Source: Haliotis cracherodii (taxonomy: Eukaryota). From it: a stretch of DNA of 64,000 nucleotides. The stretch spans positions 46,376,001 to 46,440,000 of the forward strand of contig NW_027266286.1 of NCBI RefSeq assembly GCF_022045235.1. The letters run 5' to 3'. Numbering within the stretch: position 1 is the first letter of the stretch; every line of letters begins with the position of its first letter. Of this stretch, positions 12,679 through 61,400 are shown one piece after another. The notes beneath the pieces were generated by a model that had not been told where the DNA came from, made no database searches, and worked only from the letters and a program-made list of their open reading frames with translations. The position numbers and the translations under genes are program-made.

Positions 12679-12869
12679 NNNNNNNNNNNNNNNNNNNNNN
12701 NNNNNNNNNNNNNNNNNNNNNNNNNNNNNNNNNNNNNNNNNNNNNNNNNNNNNNNNNNNNNNNNNNNNNNNNNNNNNNNNNNNNNNNNNNNNNNNNNNNN
12801 NNNNNNNNNNNNNNNNNNNNNNNNNNNNNNNNNNNNNNNNNNNNNNNNNNNNNNNNNNNNNNNNNNNNN
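12679..12869. other. Assembly gap
   Basis: Run of N. Confidence 1.
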
Positions 12870-14847: not shown

Positions 14848-16938
14848 AAACATTCATGGTCATTACACCTTTACTATGATTTCATCAGTTCTCCTGTTTT
14901 GTCGGTAGTATATTCATTGGAGGAACCAATACATTGCAAACAACAAAGGAAATGAGTATTATGAAGTCATGTTAAAGTAGATGTTTAATACATTCTTTGT
15001 TCTTTGAATACAAATTATCTTAGAATCATTCAGAGAATGTCGTTTCTTTGTGTTCATACAGAAAGCGTATCACCATTATGATTATCGGATCAATTCATGC
15101 GTTTTTCCTGAACACATGGCTACAACACTAGCGTTCGCCTTGATTAATTAGCACGTAACAATATTTACAAAGTTCATAAGGCTATTTGTTGGCGTAGGAT
15201 TAAATGGTACTACATTTTTTCGTAGATTATAACAGATAATAACAATGTGTGCCATCAAATGTGATATTATACACAGTACATTTATTATACACAGATTTTA
15301 TTCATCTACAAAATGGTGCGATTTATAATATCACTCAACTAACAAAAATTGTGCCACAATTTTATATGCAAGAAACATGACCTTATCATGACATTGCATT
15401 ATCAACTGCTTTGCAATGATTTATGGCAAAATGCCATTCGCGCGTTGCAAGTATAATTCAGTTTAACTACGGTAATACAAATAATATAATAACAGTAACC
15501 GCATTAGACATTTTCCTGTTGAGATATCGTGTTTCATTTTACACCAGGTATATTATACAGCAGCATGCATATTTGAAAAGTCAGTGTCTCTATTTTCCTT
15601 ATACATGTATATGTAGATGACAACTACAATATCGCTGTCCGCTTTATTGTGACGTGTGCATGGCTGTTCTGGATAGGCCTTCTTAATAAAACAGCACGGT
15701 CATCACAATTATCATTCGCCTTCCTGCTTCACTGATCACGCGTGTTTGATTTGCAAGCATAGGTATGACGAAAATGCTCCATGATTTTATGCAACAGATA
15801 ATTGTCAATAACCTACGTGGTACCTCAGGTATCTATCACTTGGTCTCGAGTACTGCATACATTTTAATGCGGACTACGTATTTGTGTACAAACAAATGAT
15901 ATTTCGCTGGTGTCTCATATGGTAGTCAGAAGCTTCACTCTGAACGCTTCTACCTCCTCTGCTTAGAATTGCATGATGACATATATCGGCACGCACAGTC
16001 GATTGGCGTGTTTACATGCGTTATATAGTCAAGGAAGCAAATACCGACCAGTGTCTGAACGAGGAAAGTGTGGAGATTACATCAGACAATACGGTACCTC
16101 CTTGCCCTTAAACTACAAACACTGTCATTGTGCTTAAAATAATTGTAATGATCAGACGTATATGTAGTGTCGGTATTTATTTCAAGCATTATTTAAAAGG
16201 CCGATTAAAATATACATGTGGAGTTATAGCCAATATTACAAAAAATACAAATTATAGAAACAGCTACTGTGAAATGGCAAACATTTCTATAATACACTTA
16301 TACTTTGTTACCCCAATGAAGTTTGTGGCAACTCCTTGAAAAGCAGTGAAAGGCGCGGCAATGAACTGTAGAGTTGTGTTTCTTACGTCCGCCAACATCC
16401 GCATTTCGCGGGTTTTAATCTAGCACCATACTGTTGTTCCTGGGTTTCAGATCAGGGGTTAATATTTGAGACCTTCGTCCCTTTGCACATGGAGTTAGAA
16501 TATTGTTACAACTGAAGTACTGTTCAAAAAGTAAAAGCGACAAAATCTTTTCCATATTCATAAGAAATACCTGCAGAAAGCAGAGACCATTGTACGATTC
16601 CGACTATATCATCAGCATGTACTTATAAATCACAATCAAATAGTGATGCTACCAGTTTTGGCGAAACCATGCAATCCACACATACAGTATAGTGCTAACA
16701 GCCTAACAGTAATTTATATTTTTAGAAGAAAAAAAAAACTTACATGGGGGTGTGAAATATACATTTCAAGGACTAAAGCCCTACCTTTCTCTCGGGCTTA
16801 CTCCAAGACCAGATACTAATTGCATATGTGCTGGAGCCAAACTGAAACCAGTACATGACACGGATGAGCACAATATAATTATCATAGAGTCATTATCTTG
16901 TTTTTGTTACATTTACAGAATGATTGACTGATGGTAAA

Positions 16939-17122
16939 TCAAAGGTTCTGGTAATCTTGTGTAGCCGCCACCTCATGTGCCGTATCCCCTTGAAACTTGG
17001 AAGTCTGTTCAATAATGGCATAGTTGTTAACATGAGCTCCCGCTGACAGACCGGAGTAGGTCGGGTGTTCAATGGAAGCTGGGGTGTCACCTTGTTTCTT
17101 CACAGTAAGATCGTACCGACGC
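16939..17122 (-). CDS. G2 cytoplasmic exon (ITAM-like + YxN)
   Basis: RRYDLTVKKQGDTPASIEHPTYSGLSAGAHVNNYAIIEQTSKFQGDTAHEVAATQDYQNL*; phase-2 acceptor matches the TM exon. Confidence 0.85.
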
Positions 17123-20100
17123 CTGAAAAGACACATAGTTGGAGACTATAATCTGTAGGATAAGTGAATGGGGACGTCAGATCAGTTTCAGTTGAGGGTA
17201 AAATATCTGATCATCATGGCGAATATCCCTTTGCGATTCCCCACATCTGTAAATAGGTAATAAATCCCAATCGTGGTGTCCTCAGCTGTGATATGGCAGG
17301 AGGGATTTGTCAATAGTAAATCAAACATTTCACAGGTCAGATGGGTGTTATTACTGGGCGTGTTTCACTACATGATCCCGGAAAGGTAGCTTGTGAATGT
17401 GCTTTTGAATATACCTGACTACGAGGACGTACACTGCAAGATCGACCAGAATGACAATAACAACTCCAACAGCCATCCCTCCAAAAAACACACCGGCTGC
17501 AACACGAAATAGACCCTGTGTACTACAGAGAACAAGAACGGGAATACTGTTAATAATTAACATTCAATGAAAAAAACAGTTGAAAACAAAACATTTTGGA
17601 AAGCTTCCACACATTATACGTGATGTTGAATGGATGCATGCAAACGAGAAACAGTTGCATGTTTCAACTTCACAAGTTGAAACAAAACCTGACCAACCAT
17701 TGTGTACAGTATACAACTTTAATTTGCACATACATGTAGCTAATACGTTTCTACACGCCGTTTTGTACGTTGCATCGACGATACATAACTAAATAAGCTA
17801 TCAATTTATAACCGGCAGAAGTTAATCATTTGTTTGATGTTTTAAACTATCACGTATGAAATCCTACAATGAATAATGCTCACTTGCGAATTGTGAAGAG
17901 GTGGAAACAGGAGATCTGTGCTTAGTTGACTCAGTGCTAAGTCCCACTGTTAAAAGATGGACAAACGTGTATGTGCTTTCATGATCCACAGTGAGTATCA
18001 GCGATTGATGCAAAAGACAAAAATATATGTTCTTGTATTTGAATCGTAAATCAGAAACTAGGTAATGCAAATATTTAATAAGCTATTAATTCAATACACA
18101 CAAAACATATGTGACATCGCTTTGATAATGAGTAACGCTATCGATGGTAATAATAACCAAGGTCTGAGTGTAGAATCTCCTGTTCGAGAAAATGTACTTG
18201 TCGAATTTGTGAACAATTCCCATTTGGTGAGGAACCTGACGTGTATACCATATGAGCGGAATATAATCATCAACAATCTTTTTGTGAAATTGGGATGAGA
18301 TCGAAATAGATTTTAGGTCCAGTTTATGAACTATTTTAAAACTTCCCTGGAGCAAGAACTTCAACAGAGTTGAACGTTTCATGTGAAAATATCAACTTAG
18401 GGTATATACTTATTCTGTACTTTCAGATACAATGTACTCAGTGACAAGTTATTGAACGAAAAGCATGTTTTATGTATAATTTGAAAATATATCAACTTTA
18501 AAAGAAATGTGTTGCAACCGTTTAAACAGGTACTGTACAACATTTGTTTTAAGAAATAACGTAACTTTTATTTGCAGTGTGAACAAACGCGATGCAAACC
18601 TATGCTCACAATTGATGATGTTTATTTTTAACCGAAGTTGAACAAAATATGATGTACGTGTCTCTCCTACTTACTTACTTACTTACTTACCAGAATCCAA
18701 AGTAGGGTTGATGACGGTAACACCGAAGACGTTCAGAGACATATTTAGTTAACAGATAGGAACAAGCATAACTATGTTTATCATTTTAGAGACCTTTTGC
18801 TGCAGAATAGGTATCGATAAAAGACATCGAACTGGTTGCTCTATATTATATTGTGCTAAATAGTGTGTACATGTCTCTTGGCGTTGTTGGTGCCGTGGTC
18901 CTGCATTAAAAGATAATGTGATCATTGATAATAATACATTTTCTATTCATGAAATCAACATTTATTAGATATTAGGTCTTTAATAACCTTATAAGAAAGA
19001 CATCTCACAATAGTGAGACACGGTATAGGTGTCGGTATCAGTAACGCGACTCTTATTATTTAAAGATGCATCTTGCTTGATCTGCATTCAATATGTGTCT
19101 CCTACAAGTGTGCAATTACATGTTAATTACTAAGTCTTAGGAATAACAAAGCTGACATGCAATATGTTTACCTTTCGAGAAAGTTTCTGAAATTAGAACC
19201 GTTATTGTTTTTGAGTGTGTAATCATAAAAAATACTGGACTGTACATATACTGCATCCGATGTGACTGATAAGGGTACAATTTGTCTGGGCTATACTTAT
19301 CTTGGTTTAAAGTAATTAAAAGAAGTATGCATACATTTTGTGAGTGCGTATGGTTTTACGTCACTTTCAGCAATAGTCCAACAATACCACGGAAGGTAAC
19401 ACCAAAAATGATTTTCACACATTGTACTCTCGTGGTATATATTTGTGATCATATCGAAAACTTCACTAAATATTTCAAATGAAGCCACTGATTGTCTTTA
19501 CACCCCAACGTTTAGCCAGCTGATATACAGGTGTTGTTGCGGAAAGATGCCCGTTTGATTACAGACACATGTTGGATATTTAGATAAAAAATAGTGCACA
19601 TGGCAATATCAAATTACAGTTTATGCAGCATGTACTTGCAATAAAGTGAAAATCTGGACATGATGCCTACCTGTGCTTGTCACTGTTTCAGTTTCGCACT
19701 TCACATTGAAAGGGTCTGATGCTGCAACACACACAGTAACAAATGAGTATGTAATTTTCAGAAATTGAGATTTTTGGAAGATCAATTTTAATTATACACA
19801 ATCAAACATTGGAAATAGATTATGATCATAATGATTCCTATACAAGGACACATGCTGTTGCTGGGGGTACAGTACGAAAACATCAATATATAATTACACT
19901 ACTCATTCTCACCATTGATCAGAAGCCACACTAATGCTGATGACAGGCTTGGAATATCTGAGAAGTGTAGAGATATCGGGAGCTCCGCTGTTACGTTGAG
20001 TCTCTCAAACGGTATGAACTGAGTTGAACAATTATTTGTTGTGATGACATTCCCAGGTAGGACTGACAACCATGATAAGCATTCCTCTGGAGTTCCTCGT

Positions 20101-23100
20101 CCTAACATCGCGTCAAGAGCATACATTGATATGCTTGTAGCGGTGACATTAGACTTGAAAGTGCACAAATAATTGTTGGTTTGTGGTGTAGAACATGGTA
20201 TTCTTTGATCTCCATGGGTGAGTGAGACTTGAGACAAGCCTACTGCAACACCTCCACTGAGGTACAATGAATCAATTTCTGAAACATGCATACATTCAAT
20301 TAATAGACACTTTAAGATAAACCTTTGTCTCTTGAAGGTACCATATCCTAGCCGTCGTTATATATGTATTGGTTTGTCTTCAGGAATTATATATTCTCTG
20401 TTCTCGATGGATGAGTGAGACTTGAGACATATCCTGTGCAACTCCTCCACAGATGTACACTGAATCATGTCTGCAACATTTCATGTGTATACATGCCGTT
20501 GGTGCCATCATGTTTGACATGACATCATCTTTACTGTCTTCATTGTCATCTACATGTATTGGTTTCACACCTTCACACATGCACTCATATGGTAAGTCTA
20601 CGTGCGCTTCGAGATTTGTACACAGACATAGAGTTGTAGGTAATCAAACCCTATAATCAGATCATCGGTACGGTCGACCAGCTGAATGGCCATGATTACA
20701 ATAGGTAAATGTAAAAGTTACGATGATTGACGCCATAATGCTCTTTACTCAATTTAAACAAGTACTGAATAAAGACCACAAATTAAATATGAGATCGGTT
20801 AAACAGACGAATGATTCAACACATACTTGCAGAAATTATATATGTAAATGATGTAATAGGTATTCGAGTGACTGTATTGTTGTGTGCCAAGGTGTATTTT
20901 TATCAATTTTGCCAGACATATCACGGCGGGCAACACCTACAATGAGCTTCACAATAACTGCACCCTCGTGGAAGGGGGCGAATCAGGAACTCCTACTTTC
21001 TCTTATAGCTTGAAGCCGTTATAGAATCACAAGTGAACTCTGAAACATAACTGAGCTGATGTTCTCGTTTTTCTGTCATTAGTCTGTTATCGAATACATT
21101 AGTGTGTCACAGCATACACCTTGGTCGGAGGCGGGATACATACACCGATGTTCTGTCGACCAGTTGGGAGTCTGATAGCCATGCTTTGTCCGACTGTCAC
21201 ACCTTTTTCACAGATCAACTAGAACGACCTGCTCCACATGTAGTTATTATACACGGGGAGCTTGGTTGGTTTTAGTGTTAAAATTTATTATGTACTATTT
21301 TACTAAATCCATTTTAGGGAATATTTATTGAATGAAACATCGCGACTGCTCACCTCGTAGAGTGATTTTAGTTTTGGTATTTATGACAGATGTATCTTTG
21401 TTTCGAATAAATGTATGATACTTCAATATTACTTGTGTTATCAGACACCTACTTTCATTGAATCTGAAAAGTAAAGGTCGGGGGGACGAGAACATCATTG
21501 GTTGCCTGTCGCAAACACTTACAAACATTCATTGCACAACACACATTAAATAACATGTGATATTTCATCAACGCTGATGCTCATCCAACTGCACATAGGA
21601 AGCTTTTCCTACTCAAATAGTAGCAACAGTTATCAATTATTCATCTTCTACCAATAAACACTTACTTTCAATGCACTGATATTTCACAACAGAGAATGTA
21701 AGAGCTGCACCTCGTCGCAGGGCAGGATACACACACCGAGTCTCTGTTGAACAGTCGTTGTAGAGGGAGATCAGCTCGGCGTTGTTGGACCTGTGATATC
21801 CACGTTCTGTCACACTGTCCGGGTTCCCAGTGACGCAACTGGAGAGACCTGTTCCACACTCTGTATTGTCAGTATGATATGCGTCATAGATTGCGATCTT
21901 CTGGTTGCTGCTGCAGATGAGTACATGCCAAGTACAGGGAAGGCCAAGAGATCCATAGCATGCTTTACTGGTACGTGTTCTACCTACATAAATGACACGT
22001 CACAACATACAAGTATGAACACATATAGTGAAAGTAAATCAGTGTGAATGTATTATTTCTGATTGTACCGTCTTTCTCTCAATTGTCCATCACTCACTTT
22101 TTCAGGAGTATGCCAACTAATTGATAACCTGAAACTCTATATTGTCAGTGTTGTATACGTCATACCGCCTCAGTCAGCAATATTCCATCTATACGATGGC
22201 TGAATACAAGACACGCAACGAAAACAATACATGCTCTGCTTGCCTGTCCTTTGTAATCCTCATGCAGTGCAATTTTGTCACTTAATTAATGTTAAAACTG
22301 ATGTGTTTCAAGAAACATAAGGCGATATATGACACACCCTGCGTACAAGTATGTGTCTAATGCAAAATTGGACAATTACCTGTTCTTTTAGTGTTTATAG
22401 TGGTAGTGTCGAACATATAAATTTATATCGTGAACATATGTTATGCCAATATATAAAATGACATGATAAAACATCATATATTATACAATTCAGATCAATG
22501 CACAGCATATTATAGCTTCACAGATATCAAAGATAATATACCAAGATTGTGTGAAACGGAGTAGTGCTAAATATTTTGCAGATGTGAAGTTGTGGTGGCC
22601 GATGGTGTCTTTTCATGTAGGTACTTCAAAAGTACATTTCTGTATACATAACTATATCCTGTGCGTTATCAGAGTACATATACATATGAACCTGTCCGAT
22701 CTTCATGTGAAATTTGGTTTGAATCACAATAAAAATCATAACTTGAGAACAACTTTTTAGCATCATTGATAAACTCCGATTTGGACATTTTCACATGTTC
22801 GACTTTTACGCTGTTAGGAGGTATCCTTAACATCATTAGTCTCTGGATCATGAACATGTGTCTGTTATCGCATCTGTACATGGCCGACCTTCACTTTAAA
22901 TTTGGTTTGTACGACTAAAAAATATTGTGACTTTAGACAAAAGTTTAGCATCACTTAAATACATCAGCAATTTCAACCTGACGGTGGACTCTTAATAACC
23001 GAGTCTGGACCAGACAATCAAGTGATTTACATCATGTGAGCATTGATCTACGCAAATAGGATTCGATATCATGCATCAACCAAGTCAGCGAGCCTGACCA

Positions 23101-24139
23101 CCCGATATCGTTAGTCGCCTTTTACGACAATCATGGGTTGCTGAAGATCAATTCTAACCTAAAGTCTACACAGACACCCATCGATACAATGGTGTATGAA
23201 ACCGGTAAAGGGAAATCGATGGTGAATATCCTGTAGTAGGAATAAACATTGTATTCAGTGAACCTTCCTTTTTTAAGGAATCCATAATGAACATAATAGT
23301 ATAGTTAATAGGTAAGCTTTAACTGGTAGTCCGTTCATAATACAAACAGCAACTGTCTGTGTTTCCTAAACAGTGAGTGAGTGAGTTGGGTTTAACGCCG
23401 CTTTTAACATTATTCCAGTTATATCAAGGCGTTTTTCCTAAACATGCATGTAAGAAACATTAAAGTGCTGCTGAAACTAGAAAATTAGAAGCTTCAAACT
23501 GAATTTAGAACTACAATATACAAATAGCTAACTAATTCACCCACTTGTTACACTATATGTAGCTTTATGCGCTAGTCAGTGAAACAATAATACAGTCATG
23601 TAAATTTGTTTGATTTTCCACAAAGCGGTATCATGTGTACCGTTACTAACTGCAGCCTCCAGGAGTCAGGAGCTTACAGTTGCTGAGGACGATTGAAGAC
23701 GAGATAGAAGAGAAAAAGGTGCATATTAATGTTAACCTTATGATAGGGGCATGTGTTATGTTGTTTTATTTGAAGGTAAACAAGATTTCGTGTCCATCAT
23801 ATTCCAACATCATGGATCTGCACAGCCCAACTGAAACATAAATGTCCTACATTCTTACCAACAATATTATTGGTTAATGTTGGAAATATGAATGATACCA
23901 TTTGAAAGTTATAAAACTCAAAACATGATTTAGTTGACAATTTTGGTTGATTTTTATACAATCTAGCCCCAACCAAGCATGATAATATTGCATATACGCG
24001 GATTTGTAATGAACGCGCATGAGGATTATATTTACTGAAGGATTAGGGTTCATTTGAATAAGTCCTTACCTGTATAAACTGATTGCAGGGTGTAGAGTAA
24101 AATGGCTATACCATTCGTTAAGCACACAGTCTTAGTCAT
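16939..24139 (-). CDS. G2: SUEL-like + CUB-like single-pass receptor with short ITAM-bearing tail (~377 aa)
   Basis: Exons 24139-24070 (MTKTVCLTNGIAILLYTLQSVYTG), 21983-21666 (SUEL-like), 20278-19913 (CUB-like), 19721-19671 (ASDPFNVKCETETVTST), 17946-17884 (S/T stalk), 17496-17415 (TM GVFFGGMAVGVVIVILVDLAVYVLVVR) and 17122-16939 (tail ...PTYSGLSAGAHVNNYAII...DYQNL*). All are GT-AG with compatible phases and total 1134 nt, open. Extra stalk mini-exons are possible. Confidence 0.85.
19913..20278 (-). CDS. G2 second ectodomain exon (CUB-like beta-sandwich, inferred)
   Basis: ORF 19899-20291 trimmed to the cag/gtgaga splice sites; 366 nt; paralogous to 50026-50388 and 61564-61926. Confidence 0.8.
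20385..20470 (-). pseudogene. 5' remnant of an older CUB-like exon (G2)
   Basis: tgcag|HDSVYICGGVAQDMSQVSLIHREQRIYNS*, one nt out of phase, upstream of the intact exon. Confidence 0.8.
21666..21983 (-). CDS. G2 SUEL-like lectin-fold exon
   Basis: GRTRTSKACYGSLGLPCTWHVLICSSNQKIAIYDAYHTDNTECGTGLSSC...LYNDCSTETRCVYPALRRGAALTFSVVKYQCIE; 318 nt, 8 Cys. Confidence 0.85.
23373..23433 (-). mobile_element. 5'-truncated SINE (3' end only) with TSD
   Basis: SINE tail flanked by tttcctaaaca at 23362-23372 and 23434-23444. Confidence 0.7.
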
Positions 24140-30681: not shown

Positions 30682-31222
30682 TCATTTGATTTGCCCCGCA
30701 ACAGAATGATCATAGTTGTCTTCCATTCCTGATGCAGTATCATACGGTGAACAAACAAAGTCATTGGTCACACTACGAAAATGGTCATAGTCGTCATCAT
30801 CAGTGTTCCTATCGGCCCTAGTCAGTTGTGCCACTGACTTTGATGCAGAGGCAGCTGTGTCGTAGTCATTCTGGTGTATCTGCGGGTTGGTTTTCTCGTG
30901 GAAAAGATTGTAACCATAATTGTCTTCTCCAATTGTTCCTCCTGTACGTGTAGATTGAGCCACCGAGGCTGTTGTGTCGTAGTCACTGGTTTGTGGGGAT
31001 TGTTTGTCCCCGATGTGATCATAATCACATTCGGTGGTAGAGGATGTTGAAAACTGTTCTGTATTTTGCTTCCCATAATCATAATTACTGTTCTGTGTCT
31101 TCAGATCCTGGATTTCATTGTATTTGTTCTGTGTGATTTTACCGGCCAAACTGCATGTCATATCAGGCTGTACATCCTGTGGAAATGATGCGGTCTTCTC
31201 CTTTACTTCACGTTTAGCCTGT
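30682..31222 (-). CDS. G3 long cytoplasmic exon (11 Tyr, repeated DYD motifs)
   Basis: QAKREVKEKTASFPQDVQPDMTCSLAGK...ECDYDHIGDKQSPQTSDYDTTAS...NYGYNLF...NDYDTAAS...DDYDHF...PYDTASGMEDNYDHSVAGQIK*; paralog of 57848-58469. Confidence 0.85.
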
Positions 31223-34200
31223 CTAAAATCAGTTTAGAGAAAACAGATAACTTAAACAGTAATGCATGTGGTATTATGAAGAACACATTTCAATATATTC
31301 GTAGTTTCTTTAACCAATAAAAAATCTTGACTTTTCAGTGATGGTGAAAATGTTTGTTCGCGTTGTGTACATAATTGCAAGATGCTTGGTAAGAGACTTT
31401 GCTAAGGGGGACACGTGTATATGTTTGTGTTTGGGCAACGGAAACTGACACAGTGTGTAAAGGAAATCCCTTTATGAGCTTTAAATAAATGTGTGAATGT
31501 GTTGCAGGACCTCTGATAAATGATGCACGTCTCTTATCTCGTGTCACCTCATAAAAGTTTAGCTTGTTCCTTCTATATGTCATAGCTATTACCATGAAGC
31601 GCAATGCACGTTTTTAGTTGTTGTTGATAGCTACAATGGGCCTAATTAATATGTCACTGTAACGATACATGAATTTGAATACACTTGAATACTTACCTCT
31701 TCCGTATAAGCGCCACTGACACCAATGTTACAACCAATACAGCTAAGACTGTGGCCACAACCCCACCAATAATTGCACCTGTATCATCTTCTGAAATCAA
31801 GCAAAGTTTATTCTCGGTACATGTAACATGAATATCAAATTTGGTGCTTATATATGACAATACACATTGTTAATAAGTAAATTAACTTTTCCCATACACC
31901 TTTTCTTTTCTGTTGCTAATGGGTTTATTCTTCAGTTGGCACATGAAATACGCCCCATGAAAAAACCCTACCGGGATCGGATGGCCAAGCCCTGTTGATA
32001 CATGTCATCATATGCCATTGGTTAGATTTATACTCATGATGTTAATCAAAGGTTTGTCCGGTCGAGCCTTGGTTATTTACCAACCGCTGACATATAGATG
32101 AAATATTGCGGCGTTAAACAAGAAACAAACATGAAATACAATTACGCCTATNNNNNNNNNNNNNNNNNNNNNNNNNNNNNNNNNNNNNNNNNNNNNNNNN
32201 NNNNNNNNNNNNNNNNNNNNNNNNNNNNNNNNNNNNNNNNNNNNNNNNNNNNNNNNNNNNNNNNNNNNNNNNNNNNNNNNNNNNNNNNNNNNNNNNNNNN
32301 NNNNNNNNNNNNNNNNNNNNNNNNNNNNNNNNNNNNNNNNNNNNNNNNNNNNNNNNNNNNNNNNNNNNNNNNNNNNNNNNNNNNNNNNNNNNNNNNNNNN
32401 NNTTTGGCTCAATTCCTTACCTCGGTTACAAAAGGTTCCCTAAATTGTTTGTAAACATGTACAATAAAACTGTAACAAGGTAAGTTAAACATTATTGCTC
32501 TTTAAGTTAGTTTTTGCTGTTTTTGCCAACACAATATACATGAATGTCATGCCTTAACTCGGTCGTCTAACCTCGTGTACGAGTATTTTTAATTGTTAGA
32601 ATTTGCTTTCTAAATGTGTTCTTAAACGTCCAATTTATGTCCCAAGAAAAGAATCCGGGTATTGTCTATTGCAAACAATAAAACGACTACGCAATAGGTT
32701 TAAATGGAATTAACAAGATGTTGTTTGTTGAAGAAAAAAGCTATATAAAAATATATTGAACTGTAGTTAATAATTTGTACTAATCCATAAATAGGTATCT
32801 TAATCGAATCCATAAACATATGGCGCATTAACACTGCATCCTACCTGCTGTGCGAGTGTCGTTCTCCCTTGTCACAGTTGAGACTATATTATTGGTTGTT
32901 GTTATTGCACTGGATTCTGCAATACAAGACAGGGCACTAAAACAATACAAGTGTATTTTGTGGAGGAAACATGATCGATTTTTGTTCCCATACTTGTACC
33001 TGTACGACCAGAGTCACCTTTTTTTATATTCAGATACACATGTTGACAATGTGACAATAGAACATTACAGAAGTGACCATGCAACAAGTGCATACAGAGA
33101 AATAAAATGTAAATGCGGATACATTTAGTGGTTGCCTACCTGTGTTTGTCACTGTATCAGTGTCACACTTCACATTGGAAGAGTCTGATGCTGCAATATG
33201 GCACACACATAATATAATACAGTTATGTTATCTTACTGCTTATTCATACAATAAAATAAACTACTGCTGATGACATTGTGTTGTGTGACTACACAATCAA
33301 AAGCATGCGAACAATCAGAAAATGATCAATTGAACAACTTTTTTGCGAAAGGGCCTGTGATTTCATACTCTACAATTGAACACACTGTAATACTTCTATA
33401 AATGCAATATCTCAGTTTGCCTCTAACATCACCTGTACTGACATAACTCATGATCATACATCGTGTGTCTCATTTTGTATTTTGTAAACATGATTTCACT
33501 ACTCATTCTCACTATTGATCAGAAGTCAAACTAATGTTGATGGCGGCCTTATAATATCTGAGAAGTATAGAGATATCGGGATCTCCGCTGTTACGTTGAG
33601 TCTCTCAAACGGTATGAACTGATTTAAACAATCATTTGTTGTGATGACATCCCCAGGTAGGACAGACAACTGTGATAAGCATTGCCCTGCAGTTCCTCGT
33701 CCTGACCGCGCGTCAAGAGTGAGTGAGTGAGTTTGGTTTAACGCCGCTTTTAACAGTATTCCAGTTATATCACGACGTGTCAGGTTAATGTGGGAGGAAA
33801 GACCGAAGTGATGCAGGTCTCAGACGGTTACCACTTCAGTGAAACCCACGAGCATGGGTATGGTGCTGACAAACCTAGAAACATAATCGGGGTGAACCGG
33901 GATTCGAACCCACAATCATAAGTTTCTGGCTTGCCTAAGGGACGCAACTCTGCACAGCGAATCGTGGTGCCTTAGACGACCGGGCCACCCGTGAAATTCT
34001 ATAGTATGCTTGTAGTTGCGCACAGCCATGGATCTATGACCAGCCGCTTCACATATAAGCCTACCCACTGCATGATGAAGACAGCAAGCAGCAAACGCAT
34101 GCAGTGGTTAGTGCGGTATCCAGTCAAGCCAGCTGTTTTACACATTCTAACTAAGTCGCAAGCTTATGTTGCCCCGAACGTTTTTCACAATTCATTCTCC

Positions 34201-44687: not shown

Positions 44688-44877
44688 TCAAACGTTCTGG
44701 TAATCTGGTGTAGCCGCCACCTCATGATCATGTTTCGTTTCGCCTTGAAACCAGGTAGACTGTTCAATAATGCCATAGTTGTTGACATCACCTCCCGCTG
44801 ACAGACCGGAGTAGGTGGGGTGTTCAATGGAAGCTGGGGTGTCTCCTTGTTTCTTCGGGGTAAGATCATACCGACGC
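44688..44877 (-). CDS. G4 cytoplasmic exon (ITAM-like + YxN)
   Basis: RRYDLTPKKQGDTPASIEHPTYSGLSAGGDVNNYGIIEQSTWFQGETKHDHEVAATPDYQNV*. Confidence 0.87.
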
Positions 44878-47800
44878 CTGCAAGGACGCGTAATTTGAAG
44901 CACGGTGATGAAATTGACGTCAGAGTCAGTAAATAGAGAAAACAAATATAATCATCAAGGTAAATAACCAATTGCGATTCCCCACATTGATAAATCCCAA
45001 TCGTTGTGTCATCCGATGTGATATGGCAGAAAGGTTATTAGAAACATAAAGTCACTCACTCACTTCACAACTGAGACTTGCGTTATTACTGGACGTCTTT
45101 CAAAGTATAATGTCCACTAAATAATATAAGGATAGATAGTGAATGTACTTTTAAATATACCTTACAACGAGGACGTACACTGCAAGACCGACCAGAATGA
45201 CAATAACAGCTCCGACAGCCATCCCTCCCACAAACAATCCGACTGAAACAGAAATATTCAATGTTTATTAAAAATAGAACTAAAATTCTTCTAATTAACT
45301 TTCAATTAAAAGAAACATTCAAAAGAAGGCAGTTAGTCAAATAGTCATGCAATGTACATCTGTATTTCTTAACGAATAGGTAGAAGCAAACGATCAGCAG
45401 TTAGTCAAATAGCCATGCAATGTACATCTGTATTTCTTAACGAATAGGTAGAAGCAAACGATCAGCAGTTAGTCAAATAGCCCTGCAATGTACATCTGTA
45501 TTTCTTAACGAATAGGTAGAAGCAAACGATCAGCAGTCCTTATTTACCAATACCTGCAAAACCTGATACGATCATGCTCTTTGCAACTTGCTCTTGTAAA
45601 GCTATTTTGTCCGAGCAAAGGAAAAAAAACCCAAACATCTGATGCATGTACACGTACAAGTAATTTGTAGTGAGATCACTAAGAAATATCGGGAGGTTTT
45701 ATTATTTATTATTTTATCTTTTGAACAAATATATATGAAATACCACATTATACAATGCATACCTGGGAATTGTGAAGAGGTGGGTATAATCGATTCGTCC
45801 CCAGTTGACTTAGTGGTTAATCTCACTGATAAAAATCATCAGCAACGAGTATAAACGATCAATACAAAGTCATTATATCCTCACAGTAAAACCAACACAA
45901 AAATATATGATATAGGTATAACTAACCATATATTCCGAACATTATAAACCTAAAATATTTTATCAGATATCGATTTTATTTAAAACACATTGTCACGTCA
46001 CATTGAAAAAGATTAATGCTGTAGATGCTATAAAGGAACATTACAAACATATTTACCTAATAGGATTGAACAAGGTGGCAAGCCACAATGTCCCATCAAT
46101 ACCTGGTATTTATGACGAGTTGACTGTGAAAAAAATGAAATTACTTGTTTTATCTTTTGAACAATTAGACAATTAGATAGGAAATCCCACACTGATTACT
46201 GCATACCTGGAAATTGTGAAGATGGGGATATAGTAGAGCTGTACTCAGTTGACCCAGTGGTTAGTCCCCCTGATAAAAAAAAGTAGACACACGTTTATGT
46301 GCTGTACATTCAGTACATCTTCCCAAGGCAAGTGAGTTAACTGACTATAAAAGTCCAGTTTCCACCCTTGCCGAACTAGCCTGGGATTATGGAGTTACAT
46401 TTTGGCTGGACTAACAAGTCTATGCATAGTCCAATCAAAATCGCGCACCGAAATCGAAATCCGGTTCGTTAAGTGTCATGCAGATTTCGGTCGACTGCAG
46501 CATTTGCAAAACATGTGCACCGCTAACTCGTTGTCAACAGATATTTTCTAAATCTATTCATGTTTTTAATCAAGGTGCTCATGTGATGTGATGCACTTCG
46601 CGATGTCAGACTCGTTTCATCAAAATATAGATCTTGATTATCGATCAGATCGTCTTGACTGGGCGCCACCCTTTTGTTTGAAGCAAATGCAAGTGATACG
46701 AGAGGTTGCATCTGATTGGTCAGTAGGAGAGGGATAGAAAGGACATGACTCGCAATAGCCACTGGTGGCGCTACGATCGAGCCCAGTAATTACAGCCTAG
46801 TTCGGCAAGGGTGGAAACTGGACTTTTAAAGTCAGTTAACTCTCTTGCCTCGGGAAGATGGATCACCAGGTGGTGCATGGGGTTTTAAGCGTCCCGCGTT
46901 AGGCTCGTGGTATAAAACCTGATGGGGGACGCATAAAACCCCATGTACCTTGAGTGATCCTGCTACAACGAATTTATCTTACCGACATGATTAAATGTGA
47001 CATTGTAAAAGAATTAACACAAATTCAATAGTGATAGAAAACAGCTGTTCGATTGAGGTGAGGTTAACTTGTGCTGTGTCACGTGACTGCCATTCGTGCG
47101 GCTTTTTGCTCTGAAGCGGGTTATAAGGGATTTATTATGTCTCTCAGATATCCACGTGCAGCCTGTACTGTTCATGGCGGGGTATTAGAGATTTAATGCC
47201 CCGCTGAGAAAGGCGGGTTACACAGTATTTTAGGAAGATCACGTGGACCAATCAGATCTCATCATTCTGATATGGAGGTATCATAAGATTGGTTATGAGT
47301 GTATTCGGAACTACGTGATGCCAGTATGTAAAGCACATTCTTTCACATCACATTGATAAAGATTTATGGGTGCTTCTTTATACCGATGTTTACATGATGG
47401 CATTATACAATACCTTAAAGTTTATGTTTTACCCAACACGACTGAATGAAACATGAACGATGTACATCACGACAATGGGACTCGAATATGGCAATATCAT
47501 TGGATTTAAATGATGGCAATATGTTAAAGACACATTCATGTGTGTGTTTGTGTGACCAGGTACCTACACGTACGAGTCCGTACCAAACCAATGGCGGTTT
47601 AACAGTGCTGGACCACTGAGATAGTGAGTGAGTTGGGTGAGCGGCGCCTTAGACAACTGCCCCCCCACCGTGTTTTACAGTCTGTCATTAGCAGACTATG
47701 AAACAGGTACAAACAAACCAAAATGTTGACAATCGACCCCTTTCTTGGCGCCCCAGGTCAACGACAAGAGTGTAGGTTCGATTGATCCGAAACAAGGCTC

Positions 47801-57847: not shown

Positions 57848-58469
57848 TTAGGAATATGCTCCTTTCATTGGTCCTGCAACAGAATAATCAGAATTGTCTG
57901 CCCTTCCTGATGCAGTGTCATACTGTGAACTAACAGTTTTAGGATGATTGATCACACTAGGGAAATGGTCATAGTCGTCTTCATCAGTGTTCCTATTGGT
58001 CATACTCAGTTGTGCCACTTCCTTAGTTGCAGAGACAGCAGTGTCGTAGTCATTCTGGTGTTTCTGCGGGTTGGTTTTTGTGTTGAAAAGATTGTAACCA
58101 TAATCGTCTTCTCCATTAGTTCCTCCTGTATGTGCATGTTGATCCACCGAGGCTGTTGTGTCGTAGTCACTGGTCTGTGGGGATGGTTTGTCTCCGATGT
58201 GGTCATAGTCACTTTCAGTGGTAGAAGCTTTTGCAAACTGCTTTGAATTGTGCTTCCCAGCTGGTTCTATCATGAAATATGTGTCTGCATTTGGAGGAAC
58301 AGCCAAGCCATCCGCGGTAGCGTAATCATAATCACTGCTCTGTGTCTTCAGGTCCTGAATGTCATGGCAGTTGTTCGGTGGGATTTTACCGGCCAAACTG
58401 TGTGTCATGTCAGGCTGTGCATCCAGGGGAAATGATGCGATATTCTCCTTTCCTTCGCTTTTTGCTCGC
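57848..58469 (-). CDS. G5 long cytoplasmic exon (12 Tyr)
   Basis: ORF 57848-58525 trimmed to the ttccag acceptor: RAKSEGKENIASFP...SDYDY...TYFMI...ESDYDHI...SDYDTTAS...DYGYNLF...NDYDTAVS...DDYDHF...QYDTAS...SDYSVAGPMKGAYS*. Confidence 0.87.
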
Positions 58470-61400
58470 CTGGAAGTCACAGAGTTTAGATATACAAGGT
58501 GACATAACCAGTAATACAAGTACAAACAGTAGTATTATGAAGAACATATTTCAATACAATCTTAATTTCAATCATTAAAACAAATCTGTTTGGGTTATAC
58601 TCTCAGGATCTTTCAGCGACGTTCCCAGTTTGTGAATTCTAGTCTCGCTAAAGTTTACGGGATTCTATTGTCTCAAAAATACAATGTTTTACCTTTCTAA
58701 AGGTACATCTGCCTCACTTTAATGGGTTCAAACGTTTCCACGATATAGTGAGTAGTCAAAAGTAATAGCTGATGAGACCGTTCGCTTTGCGTATTGTATA
58801 TAATTGCAAGATTCTTGGTTCGAGATTATTTTCTGAAGAAGAAATGTGTGTATCTTTGTTTTTCCAAAACCTAACAAATATGTTTACAGAGTCACACACC
58901 ACATAACTTCTATAGCAGGATAGCTTTACTGTTAATGATCAGTGTATGTGACAGATATATGAAACTGAATACATAAACGATTACTTACCTATTTCGTATA
59001 AGCCTCACTGATACCAATGTTACAACCAATATTGCTAAGACTGTGGCCACAACTCCACCAATAATTGCACCAGTACCACCTGCGACCGAACAAATATATG
59101 TCGATTAATTATTATTATCATATATCATTTATCATTATATATGTTGGCCATACCTAACATTCACTTTGTGAATGGTTACATTATTGCTGGACGATTAACG
59201 TCCTTCACACAACTTATCTGTTACTGATGTGTATTTACCACTGGCACATAAAATACCCTTGTAAAGATCCTCGCTTTTCATAACAGGTGACTAACCAGAT
59301 AGGTGGTCATGCTTGATAACTTGTTTGATATTTCTTATTGTAACCCCATTTATAACTGGATTGTTTGGTCGAGATTCGATTATTAACAGACCACCAACAC
59401 AGCTAAACAGACATGAAATACATCGTCAATTGTGAATTTACCGTAACAGATATACATATTTCGATCATCATGATGACTTGAACATGTTTTATTTTTATTT
59501 TATCTCTTGCATCAGTTACTGTCATTAAAATGATCTGTTATCATTAGAATCAAGTTTGTACTAACTTCCTTTCCAATACAGAGTATAACTGAGTAGGTCA
59601 AACATAGTAATAGTTTTTAATTATATTTTTCTTACTTGCATCAGCTGCATTTAAACTTACTGTTGCTGTCTGTTGAAGGAATGGGCTATAGCAGGATATA
59701 GTGAAATGTAGTTAATGTTTTGTACTGATCCATACAAGATTGTATTCATCTGATCCATAAAAAATGTGACAAATTACATGTGGGTCAATACATCCTGCTG
59801 TACGTGTATCGTTGTCCGCAAGCACTGTATTATTAGTCGTTGCTATTCTACTGGATTGTGCAATAGGAAAAATATAAATCGCATAAGTAGTATACACAAA
59901 ACCCTATTCTAATGAACGTTATCGAAGTCATTCTGCACGGTGGATCCAGACATATTCTTTATTTATTTAGAAAATACGGAAACTCTTACATTGACAAATA
60001 AGAATACAACAAAAGCCCATATCACTAACTCTACCTTTTAACGGTCGTTTGATCATGAAGAAAAGTCAATAATGCATTCACAGCGAACTGTCCTGAACTA
60101 TTGTCCTAAAGGTCTGGTTTGTGTAATATAAACATTTGTATTTATACATGCATTATACCTGTTGTTGTTTGAGTGTAGTTCCTCGTCGTTGCTTTTGAAG
60201 TGATATCTATAGTCAGTGATGATCTACTTGATCCTCCATAATCAGAAAATATAATCGTTGATGATAATACACTTTCCATATTAACAAGTTTACATATACA
60301 TCATGATGGGGAGATATACTGATGTGTGGGCATTTGAAACGCAACTCTTACATTATCTATTTATATGACTATCTTTATTCTATTTGGATATAAATGCGGA
60401 TCTTACACGTACACGATGTATCGGCTTTCATGCGCAAGCTAGTATTAAAAACAAGCTCTTAGGATCAACGAAGCTAACAAGTATTATGTTTACATTTCGA
60501 TAAAGTTTCTGACAAAAAGACATGAGTGTTTTAGTGAGGCGTTTGTCCTTAAAGGTCGGATTGAAAAAATACTGTGTATCCGACTTTAGCGACACTGGCA
60601 AAAGTGTGTGTAGCAATATGATTTCAATGCGTAAGGCTTGAAGAAATCCATTTTTCTGATATTCAGAACTACAATTAACTACACAATGGACGCTACTAAT
60701 TGTCTCAATGCTAAAGAACTTGCATTACCTGTTGAAATATGGTTGTTACCATCTGTTTGGGAAATATGACTGATTGTTGTACCTGTTTGATCAGAAAACA
60801 CATTGGATATGTTGATACAAATATTAAACGTGGCTAGAGCACATTTCGGATGCGATTATACAACATGTTTTAAACATTATTCAGGGGAAATCTGGATATA
60901 ACATTGGCCTACCTGCACCTGTCACTGGTCGACACGTCAAGCTAAAAGGGTTTGATGCTGCAATATAAGACACACATAACATCATAATGTCAGCTAATCT
61001 TACTGTTTATCTGGAATTGTAAGTATAACCTATTTGTCATATGTGTATATATGTGTGTGTATTTATACAAGCAATGTAAATATACATCGTGAAATTATTA
61101 CTACACAATAATTAAATTGAGTGAGTTAGTTTGGTCTTACGACGCTTTTAGCAATATTCCAGCAATATCACGGCAGGGGACACCAGAAATGGGCTTCACA
61201 CATTGTACCCATGTCGGGAATAGAACCTGGGTATTCGGCGTGACGAGCGAACGCTTTAACCGCTAGGCTACCCGACCGCCCCAATAATTAAAACTACTAC
61301 TGATGGTGCAGTGTCACTCTACAGTCAAAAACAACATTTTGGTCAATAGAGATACACCTTGATCTTTGATGTAGTTGTATCAGGACTGGTTAACGTACGA

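What the first reader, a model, noticed from the sequence alone, without database searches (positions are those of the whole stretch)
16939..17122. Canonically spaced ITAM plus terminal Grb2-type YxN in the short tails (also 44688-44877)
Seen: YSGL-SAGAHVNN-YAII (G2) and YSGL-SAGGDVNN-YGII (G4) fit YxxL-x8-YxxI, and both tails end DYQN(L/V)*. All tyrosine motifs are kept while spacer residues vary, including an in-frame 2-aa indel. Known: YxxL/I-x6-8-YxxL/I binds tandem-SH2 Syk-family kinases (Shark in invertebrates, as with Draper), and pY-x-N binds Grb2. Inference: G2 and G4 are activating or phagocytic receptors.
Basis: partly seen in the sequence, partly recalled or inferred. Interest (0 to 1): 0.8.

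Follow-up and report, generated by a model that had tools for sequence, protein, structure and literature searches.

The report
Abalone lectin-like receptors with ITAM-like tails
Two black-abalone genes for lectin-like surface receptors end in a short, expressed tail with a paired-tyrosine motif shaped like an immune-receptor activation motif plus a terminal Y-x-N. The cassette is kept across abalone species, but only about a third of family members fit the strict motif, and whether it signals or only directs trafficking is untested.

Summary
On the minus strand, the last exons of G2 (17122..16939) and G4 (44877..44688) encode the whole cytoplasmic tail. G2 has YSGL-x8-YAII and G4 has YSGL-x8-YGII, they end in DYQNL* and DYQNV*, and they differ by a 2-aa indel.

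Spliced transcript contigs join the G2 tail exon in frame to the transmembrane exon. G2 is an annotated 385-aa "uncharacterized protein" of Haliotis cracherodii. Its head has a SUEL/rhamnose-lectin-like fold.

The tail cassette was found only in abalones. I collected 32 distinct tails from four Haliotis species, carried by two ectodomain families.
- 29 keep two Yxx-hydrophobic motifs at a fixed spacing (x8 or x10).
- 11 meet the strict ITAM pattern and 18 the broad one.
- 21 end in YxN.
- Position +3 of the first tyrosine toggles between L, M and F.
- Three tails have lost a tyrosine, including the red-abalone ortholog of G2.

Composition-matched shuffles give a strict ITAM in 0.3-0.4% of cases, and none of 19 tyrosine-rich long-tail sisters has one. 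The genome encodes a Syk/ZAP-70-type N-terminal SH2.

Verdict: this is a real, selected tyrosine cassette of ITAM type. Syk/Grb2 signalling is plausible but unproven, and YxxΦ sorting is a serious rival. The scan had already noted ITAM-like tails in other abalone receptor families.

The parts
16939..17122 (-). G2 terminal exon. It encodes the whole 61-aa cytoplasmic tail and the stop codon (TGA at 16941-16939).
   Evidence: ORF and translation. The AG acceptor is in the same phase in all 8 genomic copies. The exon matches residues 323-385 of database protein P0021.
17011..17058 (-). G2 ITAM-like segment YSGL (17058-17047), 8 spacer residues, YAII (17022-17011).
   Evidence: Codons read directly. 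Regex and shuffle test.
16942..16953 (-). G2 C-terminal YQNL. It fits both YxN and YxxΦ at the very C-terminus.
   Evidence: Family comparison.
17123..17414 (-). Intron between the G2 TM exon and tail exon (GT..AG on the minus strand).
   Evidence: The joint 17121|17414 (cut +1) appears in spliced contigs of runs X1, X2 and X3, from three organism labels and three studies. X1 record 4 is about 99% identical to G2.
17415..17496 (-). G2 transmembrane exon (…GVFFGGMAVGVVIVILVDLAVYVLVV). Its last 2 nt plus g17122 form the Arg codon that starts the RRR stop-transfer.
   Evidence: Helix 304-329 in the model.
17889..17946 (-). G2 stalk exon.
   Evidence: RNA joints. tblastn of P0021.
19672..19721 (-). 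G2 small exon (ASDPFNVKCE…).
19913..20278 (-). Its fold is unresolved.
   Evidence: No Pfam match. Low pLDDT.
21666..21993 (-). G2 SUEL/rhamnose-lectin-like domain exon.
   Evidence: Foldseek matches latrophilin Gal_lectin domains and RBLs CSL3 and SUL-I (probability 0.94-1.00, target TM-score about 0.6 for the single-domain latrophilin chains). No Pfam hit.
24065..24139 (-). G2 first coding exon (signal peptide).
   Evidence: tblastn of P0021 residues 1-25, 96% identity.
44688..44877 (-). G4 terminal exon. It encodes the 63-aa cytoplasmic tail and the stop codon.
44766..44813 (-). G4 ITAM-like segment YSGL-x8-YGII.
   Evidence: Codons read..
44691..44702 (-). G4 C-terminal YQNV.
45161..45242 (-). 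G4 transmembrane exon, with the same acceptor, donor and phase as in G2.
   Evidence: Alignment with the G2 TM exon. tblastn.

Best explanation
G2 and G4 are tandem paralogs of a family found only in abalones. The proteins are type I membrane receptors: signal peptide, SUEL/rhamnose-lectin-like domain, a second beta-rich domain, a stalk, one TM helix and a tail.

Their last exon encodes a disordered tail of about 61 aa that is a conserved tri-tyrosine cassette:
- HPTY-S-G-[L/M/F];
- then, 8 residues later (10 in a sister family), N-x-Y-x-x-[I/L/M];
- then a C-terminal Y-x-N-Φ.

Most likely mechanism (inferred, not shown): after ligand-driven clustering, a Src-family kinase phosphorylates the tyrosines. 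The membrane-proximal pair, whose tyrosines are 12 residues apart, docks a tandem-SH2 protein, most likely the Syk/Shark-type kinase whose N-SH2 exons are in this genome. The terminal pYxN recruits a Grb2/Drk-type adaptor. The same YxxΦ motifs probably also drive endocytosis of the engaged receptor, as they do in vertebrate ITAM receptors.

Shown here: gene structure, expression and splicing, topology, conservation and selection on the motif, and presence of a Syk-family SH2.
Inferred: phosphorylation, the binding partners, and the activating or phagocytic output.
For: - The sequences fit YxxL-x8-YxxI plus YxN.
- A chance match is unlikely. A strict ITAM appears in 0.3-0.4% of shuffles and in 0 of 19 Tyr-rich long-tail sisters.
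- The tail exon is spliced in frame to the TM exon in transcript contigs of three runs.
- The model shows a TM helix at 304-329 and a tail with pLDDT below 50 and no secondary structure, as expected for a linear-motif region.
- Eight genomic copies share the acceptor phase.
- In 32 distinct tails from H. cracherodii, H. rufescens, H. rubra and H. asinina, 29 keep the paired YxxΦ at a fixed spacing and 21 end in YxN.
- The three motif tyrosine columns show 1, 2 and 1 changes on the tree, against a typical 3-6.
- Tail dN/dS is about 0.2-0.3 against paralogs with dS above 1, yet all three tyrosines, their +3 hydrophobics and the spacing persist.
- Asn at +2 of the last Tyr is kept across the deep split between YQN[LIVM] and YINV, while its neighbours differ. 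SH2 reading predicts this. AP-2 reading does not.
- Two consecutive exons at G000:C34:47.627 Mb match the N-SH2 of SYK/ZAP-70 at E 1e-15 to 1e-17.
- Src-type kinase exons are present.
- ITAM-Syk signalling has been shown experimentally in a mollusc, oyster CgIgR-CgSyk (PMC6994640).
Against: - Only 11 of 32 tails meet Yxx[LI]-x6-8-Yxx[LI], and 18 of 32 meet the x6-12 form.
- Position +3 of Tyr1 toggles L/M/F and +3 of Tyr2 toggles I/L/M. That is the YxxΦ alphabet, not the L/I that Syk-family SH2 domains prefer.
- The H. rufescens ortholog of G2 (P0022) has Cys for Tyr2. P0033 has Ser for Tyr1. P0010/P0023 lost Tyr2 and the C-terminus.
- One subgroup ends in DYQTI*, with no Asn.
- The acidic residue sits at -4 rather than -3, the position in the ELM-type ITAM pattern as I recall it.
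- H and P at -3/-2 of Tyr1 and N at -2 of Tyr2 are as invariant as the tyrosines. SH2 docking does not explain this.
- Only the N-SH2 exons of the Syk-family gene were seen. A Grb2/Drk ortholog was not pinned down.
- There are no phosphorylation, binding, tissue or immune-challenge data.
Confidence: 0.45

Rival explanations
1. The three tyrosine motifs are mainly YxxΦ sorting signals read unphosphorylated by AP-2/AP-1/AP-3 mu subunits. On this reading the proteins are endocytic or lysosome-directed lectin-like cargo receptors, and the ITAM resemblance is a by-product of two YxxΦ motifs lying close together.
For: - Every variant at the three +3 positions is L, I, M, F or V.
- 27 of 32 tails have YxxΦ at or one residue from the C-terminus.
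- One subgroup ends in DYQTI*, the same YQTI as the LAMP-1 lysosomal signal GYQTI* (my own knowledge of the YXXØ literature).
- The L/M/F toggling at Tyr1+3 fits the mu2 pocket better than a Syk SH2 pocket.
Against: - Sorting signals act singly. They predict neither a fixed Tyr-Tyr spacing within each subfamily (12 or 14 residues) nor conservation of Asn at +2 of the last Tyr across the deep family split.
- Lysosomal YxxΦ signals normally lie 6-9 residues from the membrane. These lie 23, 35 and 58 residues away.
- The two functions are not exclusive.
Confidence: 0.25
2. The tail is a phosphotyrosine signalling cassette read by SH2 proteins other than Syk and Grb2. Candidates are PI3K p85 on the YxxM variants, SHP-2, PLC-gamma or Src-family SH2 domains, or an unknown reader that needs the invariant H-P-x-Y and N-x-Y contexts.
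For: - YSGM (G1, L002, P0001, P0018) and YAVM (L006, L007) are YxxM motifs.
- The genome encodes p85-like tandem SH2, SHP-2, two PLC-gamma-like genes, SHIP, Csk and Src-type kinases.
- The conserved -2/-3 residues hint at a reader or kinase other than the classical ones.
Against: - YxxM occurs at only one of the two sites in any tail, and in a minority of tails.
- There are no ITIM/ITSM patterns. The -2 residues are P, N and P/Q.
- It is not NPxY (N is at -2, not -3) and not PPxY (H is at -3).
Confidence: 0.2
3. The motif match is a chance feature of a young, slowly diverging paralog family and has no function.
For: - The close paralogs are 87-97% identical in the exon, so G2 and G4 sharing the motif proves little by itself.
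- Three family members have lost a tyrosine.
- The first-stage scan reports ITAM-like tails in several other abalone families, so some over-calling is likely.
Against: - The motif is retained between subfamilies with saturated synonymous sites (dS 1.2-2.0) and 33-46% tail identity.
- It is retained in orthologs from four species.
- The shuffle probability is 0.3-0.4%.
- It is absent from 19 Tyr-rich long tails.
Confidence: 0.07

Closest known systems
Vertebrate ITAM receptors with the motif in their own tail (e.g. FcγRIIA) and ITAM adaptors (CD3ζ, Igα/β, FcRγ, DAP12)
   Same: - Two YxxL/I motifs in a short disordered cytoplasmic tail of a single-pass membrane protein.
- The spacing lies within the accepted range.
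- The genes sit in a tandem, fast-evolving cluster, with sister genes that carry the same ectodomain on a different tail.
   Different: - There is no sequence homology, and the ectodomain is a SUEL-lectin-like head rather than Ig.
- Half the family has M or F at a +3 position.
- The acidic residue is at -4.
- The sister long tails carry no ITIM.
- Binding to Syk is untested.
Oyster CgIgR-CgSyk pathway (PMC6994640)
   Same: A molluscan type I receptor with an ITAM in its own tail. In oyster it co-precipitates with a two-SH2 Syk kinase and drives ERK activation and phagocytosis. This shows that the proposed mechanism exists in the phylum.
   Different: CgIgR has five Ig domains, is a single gene in a bivalve, and has experimental support. 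The abalone family has lectin-like heads, was found only in Haliotis, and has none.
Drosophila Draper (CED-1/MEGF10 family) with Src42A and Shark (PMC4503800, PMC6219719)
   Same: An invertebrate engulfment receptor whose own tail bears an ITAM read by a tandem-SH2 kinase after Src-family phosphorylation.
   Different: Draper has EGF repeats, an additional NPxY motif and a longer ITAM spacer. It is ancient and conserved. The abalone tails have no NPxY and no homology to Draper.
YxxΦ tyrosine-based sorting signals (LAMP-1 GYQTI*, transferrin receptor YTRF)
   Same: All three abalone motifs fit YxxΦ in every family member that retains the tyrosine. The last one lies at the extreme C-terminus, and one subgroup ends in YQTI.
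   Different: The distance from the membrane is much larger than for lysosomal signals. The conserved spacing and the +2 Asn are not features of sorting signals.
Lectin-headed Syk-coupled receptors (Dectin-1, CLEC-2 hemITAM)
   Same: A glycan-binding-type head is coupled directly to a tyrosine motif in the receptor's own tail.
   Different: Those are type II C-type lectins with a single YxxL (hemITAM). These are type I, have a SUEL/RBL-like fold without a Pfam Gal_Lectin match, and carry a full pair of motifs.

Membership tests
ITAM (immunoreceptor tyrosine-based activation motif) | Two Yxx[L/I] motifs | tested here: met
   G2 has YSGL and YAII. G4 has YSGL and YGII. Family-wide, only 18 of 32 distinct tails have L/I at both +3 positions. 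The others have M or F at one site.
ITAM (immunoreceptor tyrosine-based activation motif) | Spacer of 6-8 residues (up to 12 in broad definitions) between the two motifs | tested here: met
   The spacer is 8 residues in G2, G4 and all of subfamily 1, and 10 residues in the sister family.
ITAM (immunoreceptor tyrosine-based activation motif) | Location in the cytoplasmic domain of a membrane receptor or adaptor | tested here: met
   N-terminal signal peptide, predicted TM helix at 304-329 followed by RRR, and a disordered C-terminal tail. The TM-to-tail splice is confirmed in transcript contigs. Topology is inferred from the positive-inside rule.
ITAM (immunoreceptor tyrosine-based activation motif) | Acidic residue just upstream of the first Tyr ([DE]xxY in the ELM-type pattern, recalled from memory) | tested here: inconclusive
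   The sequence is E-H-P-T-Y, so Glu is at -4, not -3. It is D at -4 in L006/L007, and absent or at -5 in the sister family.
ITAM (immunoreceptor tyrosine-based activation motif) | Conservation of both tyrosines in orthologs | tested here: inconclusive
   29 of 32 tails keep both tyrosines. The annotated H. rufescens ortholog of G2 (P0022) has Cys at Tyr2, P0033 has Ser at Tyr1, and P0010/P0023 have Ser at Tyr2.
ITAM (immunoreceptor tyrosine-based activation motif) | A Syk/ZAP-70/Shark-type tandem-SH2 kinase in the same organism | tested here: inconclusive
   Two consecutive exons at G000:C34:47,627,110-47,631,066 match the N-SH2 and interdomain A of SYK/ZAP-70 (E 3e-15 and 6e-17, next unrelated families at 1e-5 to 1e-8). 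The C-SH2 and the kinase domain were not located.
ITAM (immunoreceptor tyrosine-based activation motif) | Phosphorylation by Src-family kinases and phospho-dependent binding of the tandem SH2 domains | not testable with these tools
   This needs peptide binding or cell assays.
Grb2/Drk-type pYxN docking site | Asn at +2 of a tyrosine in the cytoplasmic tail | tested here: met
   G2 has YQNL and G4 has YQNV. 21 of 32 tails end in YxN, including YINV in the sister family. The L006/L007/P0017/P0033 subgroup has YQTI.
Grb2/Drk-type pYxN docking site | Grb2/Drk ortholog present, and binding shown | tested here: inconclusive
   Three similar SH2 exons at C12:36.80-36.90 Mb looked Grb2-like by eye. 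In the PDB search the one exon tested scored as well against SHP-2, Fyn and ZAP-70 as against GRB2. Binding is not testable here.
YxxΦ sorting signal | Tyr followed at +3 by a bulky hydrophobic residue in a cytosolic, accessible segment | tested here: met
   All retained motifs have L, I, M, F or V at +3. The tail is predicted to be disordered. Function is not testable here.
SUEL/rhamnose-binding lectin (Gal_Lectin, PF02140) domain | Sequence match to the family profile | tested here: not met
   No Pfam hit at E<=1 for the domain exons of G2 and G4. No precomputed Pfam domain on any family protein.
SUEL/rhamnose-binding lectin (Gal_Lectin, PF02140) domain | The fold | tested here: met
   The AlphaFold model of residues about 25-130 has pLDDT 65-84. 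Foldseek matches latrophilin Gal_lectin domains (probability 1.00, target TM-score 0.56-0.61) and RBLs CSL3 and SUL-I. Sugar binding was not assessed.

The most novel reading that the evidence does not exclude
The cluster may be an abalone-specific paired-receptor system. Near-identical SUEL-lectin-like ectodomains are wired alternately along the chromosome to two tails: a short ITAM-type/YxN tail (G1, G2, G4) or a roughly 200-aa acidic multi-tyrosine tail (G3, G5). Some H. rubra gene models list both tails as isoforms. The same TM-plus-tail cassette is also attached to a second, unrelated ectodomain family. That would make it an independently evolved signalling module, analogous to vertebrate activating/inhibitory receptor pairs, read by the abalone Syk-family kinase.
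Probability: 0.2. Interest if true: 0.7.

Novelty: new variant of a known kind. Interest (0 to 1): 0.4.

Why it matters
If the tail really couples to Syk/Shark and Drk, abalones would have a private, tandemly expanding family of lectin-headed receptors with built-in ITAM signalling. It would come paired with sister genes that carry a different tyrosine-rich tail. This would be a tractable invertebrate parallel to vertebrate paired immune receptors, and a candidate recognition system in a group hit hard by infectious disease (black abalone is endangered).

The family also gives a natural mutational series: L/M/F at +3, x8 against x10 spacing, Y>C and Y>S losses, and YQN against YQT. This series would let ITAM reading be separated from YxxΦ sorting experimentally.

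If the motifs are only sorting signals, the finding is ordinary.

Tried and rejected
Searches that returned nothing useful:
- Pfam on each G2/G4 exon gave no domain. There were only sub-threshold DUF hits on the TM exon.
- A profile of eight tails against 1.84 billion representatives gave 15 hits. The non-abalone ones that I read (P0009, P0011, P0012, P0015) are multi-repeat proteins, two of them bacterial adhesin-type repeats (GADVGNYAITDQ), and are spurious. P0008 was not read.
- No relative outside Haliotis was found.

Motif classes considered and rejected:
- ITIM/ITSM: the -2 residues are P, N and P/Q.
- NPxY: Asn is at -2, not -3.
- PPxY/LPxY: His is at -3.

The hunt for Syk took many calls:
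- Tandem SH2 candidates turned out to be Csk-like, PLC-gamma (two genes), SHP-2, p85 (two loci), SHIP and an SH3-SH2-SH2-Src-type kinase.
- A small fetch finally found the Syk-family N-SH2 exons.
- The Grb2/Drk assignment stayed inconclusive.

Other limits and dead ends:
- A literature hit for 'Haliotis + ITAM' was an author name, Itami.
- I did not build or search a joined spliced model of my own. Exons were searched apart, and the full-length query was the database's own protein P0021.
- The N runs at 12679-12869 and 32152-32402 were left untouched.

Full report
**What is in the sequence.**
- The window is G000:C23:46,376,001-46,440,000 of a 1.18-Gb assembly.
- G2's product is identical to the NCBI protein "uncharacterized protein [Haliotis cracherodii]" (P0021, 385 aa). 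The organism is therefore black abalone.
- The finding lies on the minus strand.
- In G2, an AG acceptor at 17124-17123 opens an exon that runs from 17122 to the TGA at 16941-16939. It reads (R)RRYDLTVKKQGDTPASIEHPTYSGLSAGAHVNNYAIIEQTSKFQGDTAHEVAATQDYQNL*.
- In G4, the homologous exon 44877..44688 reads …HPTYSGLSAGGDVNNYGIIEQSTWFQGETKHDHEVAATPDYQNV*.

**It is a real, expressed cytoplasmic tail.**
- I laid contigs of four transcriptome-like runs on 16500-22400. This gave a canonical GT..AG joint at 17121|17414 in three runs with three organism labels. One 209-nt contig is about 99% identical to G2.
- Further joints chain the exons 21666 | 20278..19913 | 19721..19671 | 17946..17889 | 17496..17415 | 17122.. 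.
- The TM exon ends with two bases that, together with g17122, make Arg. The protein therefore reads …LAVYVLVV-RRRYDL… .
- G4 has the same acceptor, donor and phase.
- All eight genomic copies of the tail exon have the acceptor in the same phase.
- An AlphaFold model of P0021, built on a 24-sequence family alignment, shows a signal-peptide helix, a moderately confident first domain, a TM helix at 304-329, and a tail (331-385) with pLDDT below 50 and no secondary structure.
- Foldseek places the first domain with latrophilin Gal_lectin domains and the rhamnose-binding lectins CSL3 and SUL-I. Pfam sees nothing.
- The second domain remains unresolved.
Exons were searched apart, and the database's own full-length protein was used where a whole protein was needed.

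**How far the tail goes.**
- A six-frame search of the abalone genome with the G2 tail found eight copies.
- Five are close copies in the same cluster at C23:46.31-46.49 Mb. They include G1's tail just outside the window. One of the five has TAA in place of the Gln codon, so it ends …DY*.
- Two are about 45% identical, at C23:21.38-21.40 Mb.
- One is about 33% identical, at C23:42.97 Mb.
- A profile of these eight against 1.84 billion representative proteins returned abalone proteins plus multi-repeat proteins. Those repeat proteins that I read are spurious matches.
- Three word-indexed searches returned only Haliotis proteins, all unnamed or misnamed as mucin-like. The species are H. cracherodii, H. 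rufescens, H. rubra and H. asinina.
- The homologous TM-plus-tail cassette is attached to three kinds of head: SUEL-like only, SUEL-like plus the second domain, and an unrelated Cys-rich domain with a mucin-like stalk.
- Other family members with the same SUEL-like heads carry a different TM and a roughly 200-aa acidic tail with 9-14 tyrosines. G3 and G5 are of this type.

**How well the motif is kept.** Counts below are over 32 distinct short tails.

| Feature | Tails |
|---|---|
| Two Yxx-[LIMFV] motifs at a fixed spacing (x8 in subfamily 1, x10 in the sister family) | 29 |
| Yxx[LI]-x6-12-Yxx[LI] (broad ITAM) | 18 |
| Yxx[LI]-x6-8-Yxx[LI] (strict ITAM) | 11 |
| C-terminal YxN | 21 |
| YxxΦ at or next to the C-terminus | 27 |

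- The first +3 position toggles between L, M and F. G1 itself has YSGM.
- The second +3 position toggles between I, L and M.
- Three tails have lost a tyrosine:
  - P0022, the H. rufescens ortholog of G2 (83% identical overall), has NNCDII.
  - P0033 has HPTSADL.
  - P0010/P0023 have NNSTSI and a frameshift-like end.
- On a tree of 22 subfamily-1-centred tails, the three motif tyrosine columns changed 1, 2 and 1 times, against 3-6 for typical columns.
- H and P at -3/-2 of Tyr1, and N at -2 of Tyr2, are equally invariant.
- Pairwise dN/dS of the tail exon is 0.2-0.7 among close copies. It is 0.2-0.3 against the distant copies, whose dS is saturated at 1.2-2.0. The retention there of all three tyrosines, their hydrophobic +3 residues and the spacing therefore reflects selection, not recency.
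- Composition-preserving shuffles produce a strict ITAM in 0.26-0.39% of cases.
- None of the 19 long tails contains one, despite 9-14 tyrosines each.

**Readers available in the genome.**
- An SH2 (PF00017) scan gave 58 exon matches.
- The ones I examined are, by PDB search or by resemblance:
  - a Csk-like pair, SHP-2, two PLC-gamma-like genes and two p85-like loci;
  - SHIP, Abl, Crk, Shc, SH2B, Fes and Src-type kinases.
- Two consecutive exons at C34:47,627,110-47,631,066 best match the N-terminal SH2 and interdomain A of human SYK and ZAP-70, at E 3e-15 and 6e-17. The first of the two exons begins with a Met.
- A Syk-family gene therefore exists in this genome. I did not reach its C-SH2 or its kinase domain.
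- A Grb2/Drk ortholog was not pinned down.
- In oyster, an ITAM-bearing receptor, CgIgR, co-precipitates with CgSyk and drives ERK activation and phagocytosis (PMC6994640).
- Draper-Src42A-Shark is the Drosophila precedent.

**Interpretation.**
- The tyrosine cassette is real, expressed, disordered, restricted to abalones in the databases searched, and under purifying selection.
- Its shape in G2 and G4 is a textbook ITAM plus a Grb2-type YxN.
- Conservation of the +2 Asn across the deep split, and of the Tyr-Tyr distance within each subfamily, favours SH2-type reading.
- Against this, the L/M/F and I/L/M toggling, the DYQTI* subgroup and the extreme C-terminal position of the last motif are what YxxΦ sorting signals would show.
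- Three natural tyrosine losses, including one in G2's own ortholog, show that individual copies can do without the full pair.
- The invariant H-P-x-Y and N-x-Y contexts are unexplained by either reading.
- My estimates are:
  - about 0.45 for an ITAM-type phosphotyrosine cassette read by Syk/Shark and Drk, probably doubling as an endocytic signal;
  - 0.25 for mainly sorting;
  - 0.2 for phosphotyrosine signalling through other readers;
  - under 0.1 for no function.
- 'Activating or phagocytic receptor' remains inference.

**Novelty and score.**
- ITAM-bearing receptors are known in invertebrates, including molluscs.
- The gene is already annotated, as uncharacterized.
- This scan had already noted ITAM-like tails in other black-abalone receptor families on other DNA: F-type lectin/EGF, IgSF and MFS-like families.
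- What is new is the combination:
  - a SUEL-lectin-fold head with an ITAM-type tail;
  - alternation with long-tail sisters in one tandem array;
  - re-use of the TM-plus-tail cassette on a second ectodomain family.
- I found no paper on such a combination.
- I rate it a new variant of a known kind, with interest 0.4.

**Limits.**
- The sequencing runs are coded, so tissue is unknown.
- The runs are only guessed to be RNA, although their spliced joints show a cDNA origin.
- The N runs were not touched.

Noticed in passing
window 17441-17443 (minus strand): The G2 transmembrane helix has Asp (GAT; …VILVDLAVYV…) where paralogs and orthologs have Gly, Cys or Asn. The H. rufescens ortholog has Gly. 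In vertebrates, a charged TM residue marks receptor-adaptor pairing. Here it is specific to H. cracherodii G2.
   Followed up: partly
window 30685-31233 and 57851-58534 (minus strand); database proteins P0025-P0044: Most long-tail sisters (G3's tail and 16 of 19 database long tails) begin with TYSLAG-x5-[NK]Y[HN]EI. This looks like the short-tail TYSGLSAG-x4-NNYxII, but the Tyr-Tyr distance is 11 and the first +3 residue is Ala. The two tail types may share a membrane-proximal module. No long tail fits an ITAM pattern.
   Followed up: partly
H. rubra proteins P0016/P0024 versus P0028/P0031 (LOC124265724), and P0023 versus P0042/P0044 (LOC124273454): The same gene model lists isoforms with either the short ITAM-type tail or the long acidic tail. 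This reflects either alternative 3' exons or read-through between tandem genes.
   Followed up: no
L008 (G000:C23:42,971,682-42,974,807); proteins P0006, P0013, P0014, P0046-P0055: A second abalone family (a Cys-rich domain plus a Ser/Thr-rich stalk, annotated as mucin- or DAN4-like) carries a homologous TM-plus-tail cassette. Its tail has HPTYSG[LF]-x10-YD[IKT][ILM] and ends in PYINV[SPT]*.
   Followed up: partly
L019 and L020 (G000:C34:58,509,000-58,528,999, + strand): The exon order reads SH3, then two successive SH2-like exon pairs, then a Src-type kinase domain (HRDLRAAN). This may be an SH3-SH2-SH2-kinase. It lies in a 170-kb stretch with six SH2 C-half hits. It has not been verified as one transcript.
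   Followed up: partly
L056 and L061 (G000:C34:47,627,040-47,633,440): These loci hold the first two coding exons of a Syk/ZAP-70-family kinase (N-SH2). A reverse-transcriptase/RNase H-like ORF of about 390 codons sits in the intron between them.
   Followed up: partly
L003 (G000:C23:46,313,081-46,316,260): One close paralog of the tail exon has TAA in place of the Gln codon of DYQNL. Its tail ends …TPDY* and lacks the terminal YxN/YxxΦ.
   Followed up: no
window 17018 (minus-strand codon 17019-17017): All four transcript-like runs read T instead of G here. This turns YAII into YDII, the commoner family state. Ala is therefore an allele or assembly-specific variant of G2.
   Followed up: no
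window 20839-20982 versus RNA joint 20278|21666: The annotated protein P0021 contains a short segment (VARRDMS) from a micro-exon between the two ectodomain exons. Transcript contigs of run X3 join 21666 directly to 20278, so the micro-exon is probably alternative.
   Followed up: no
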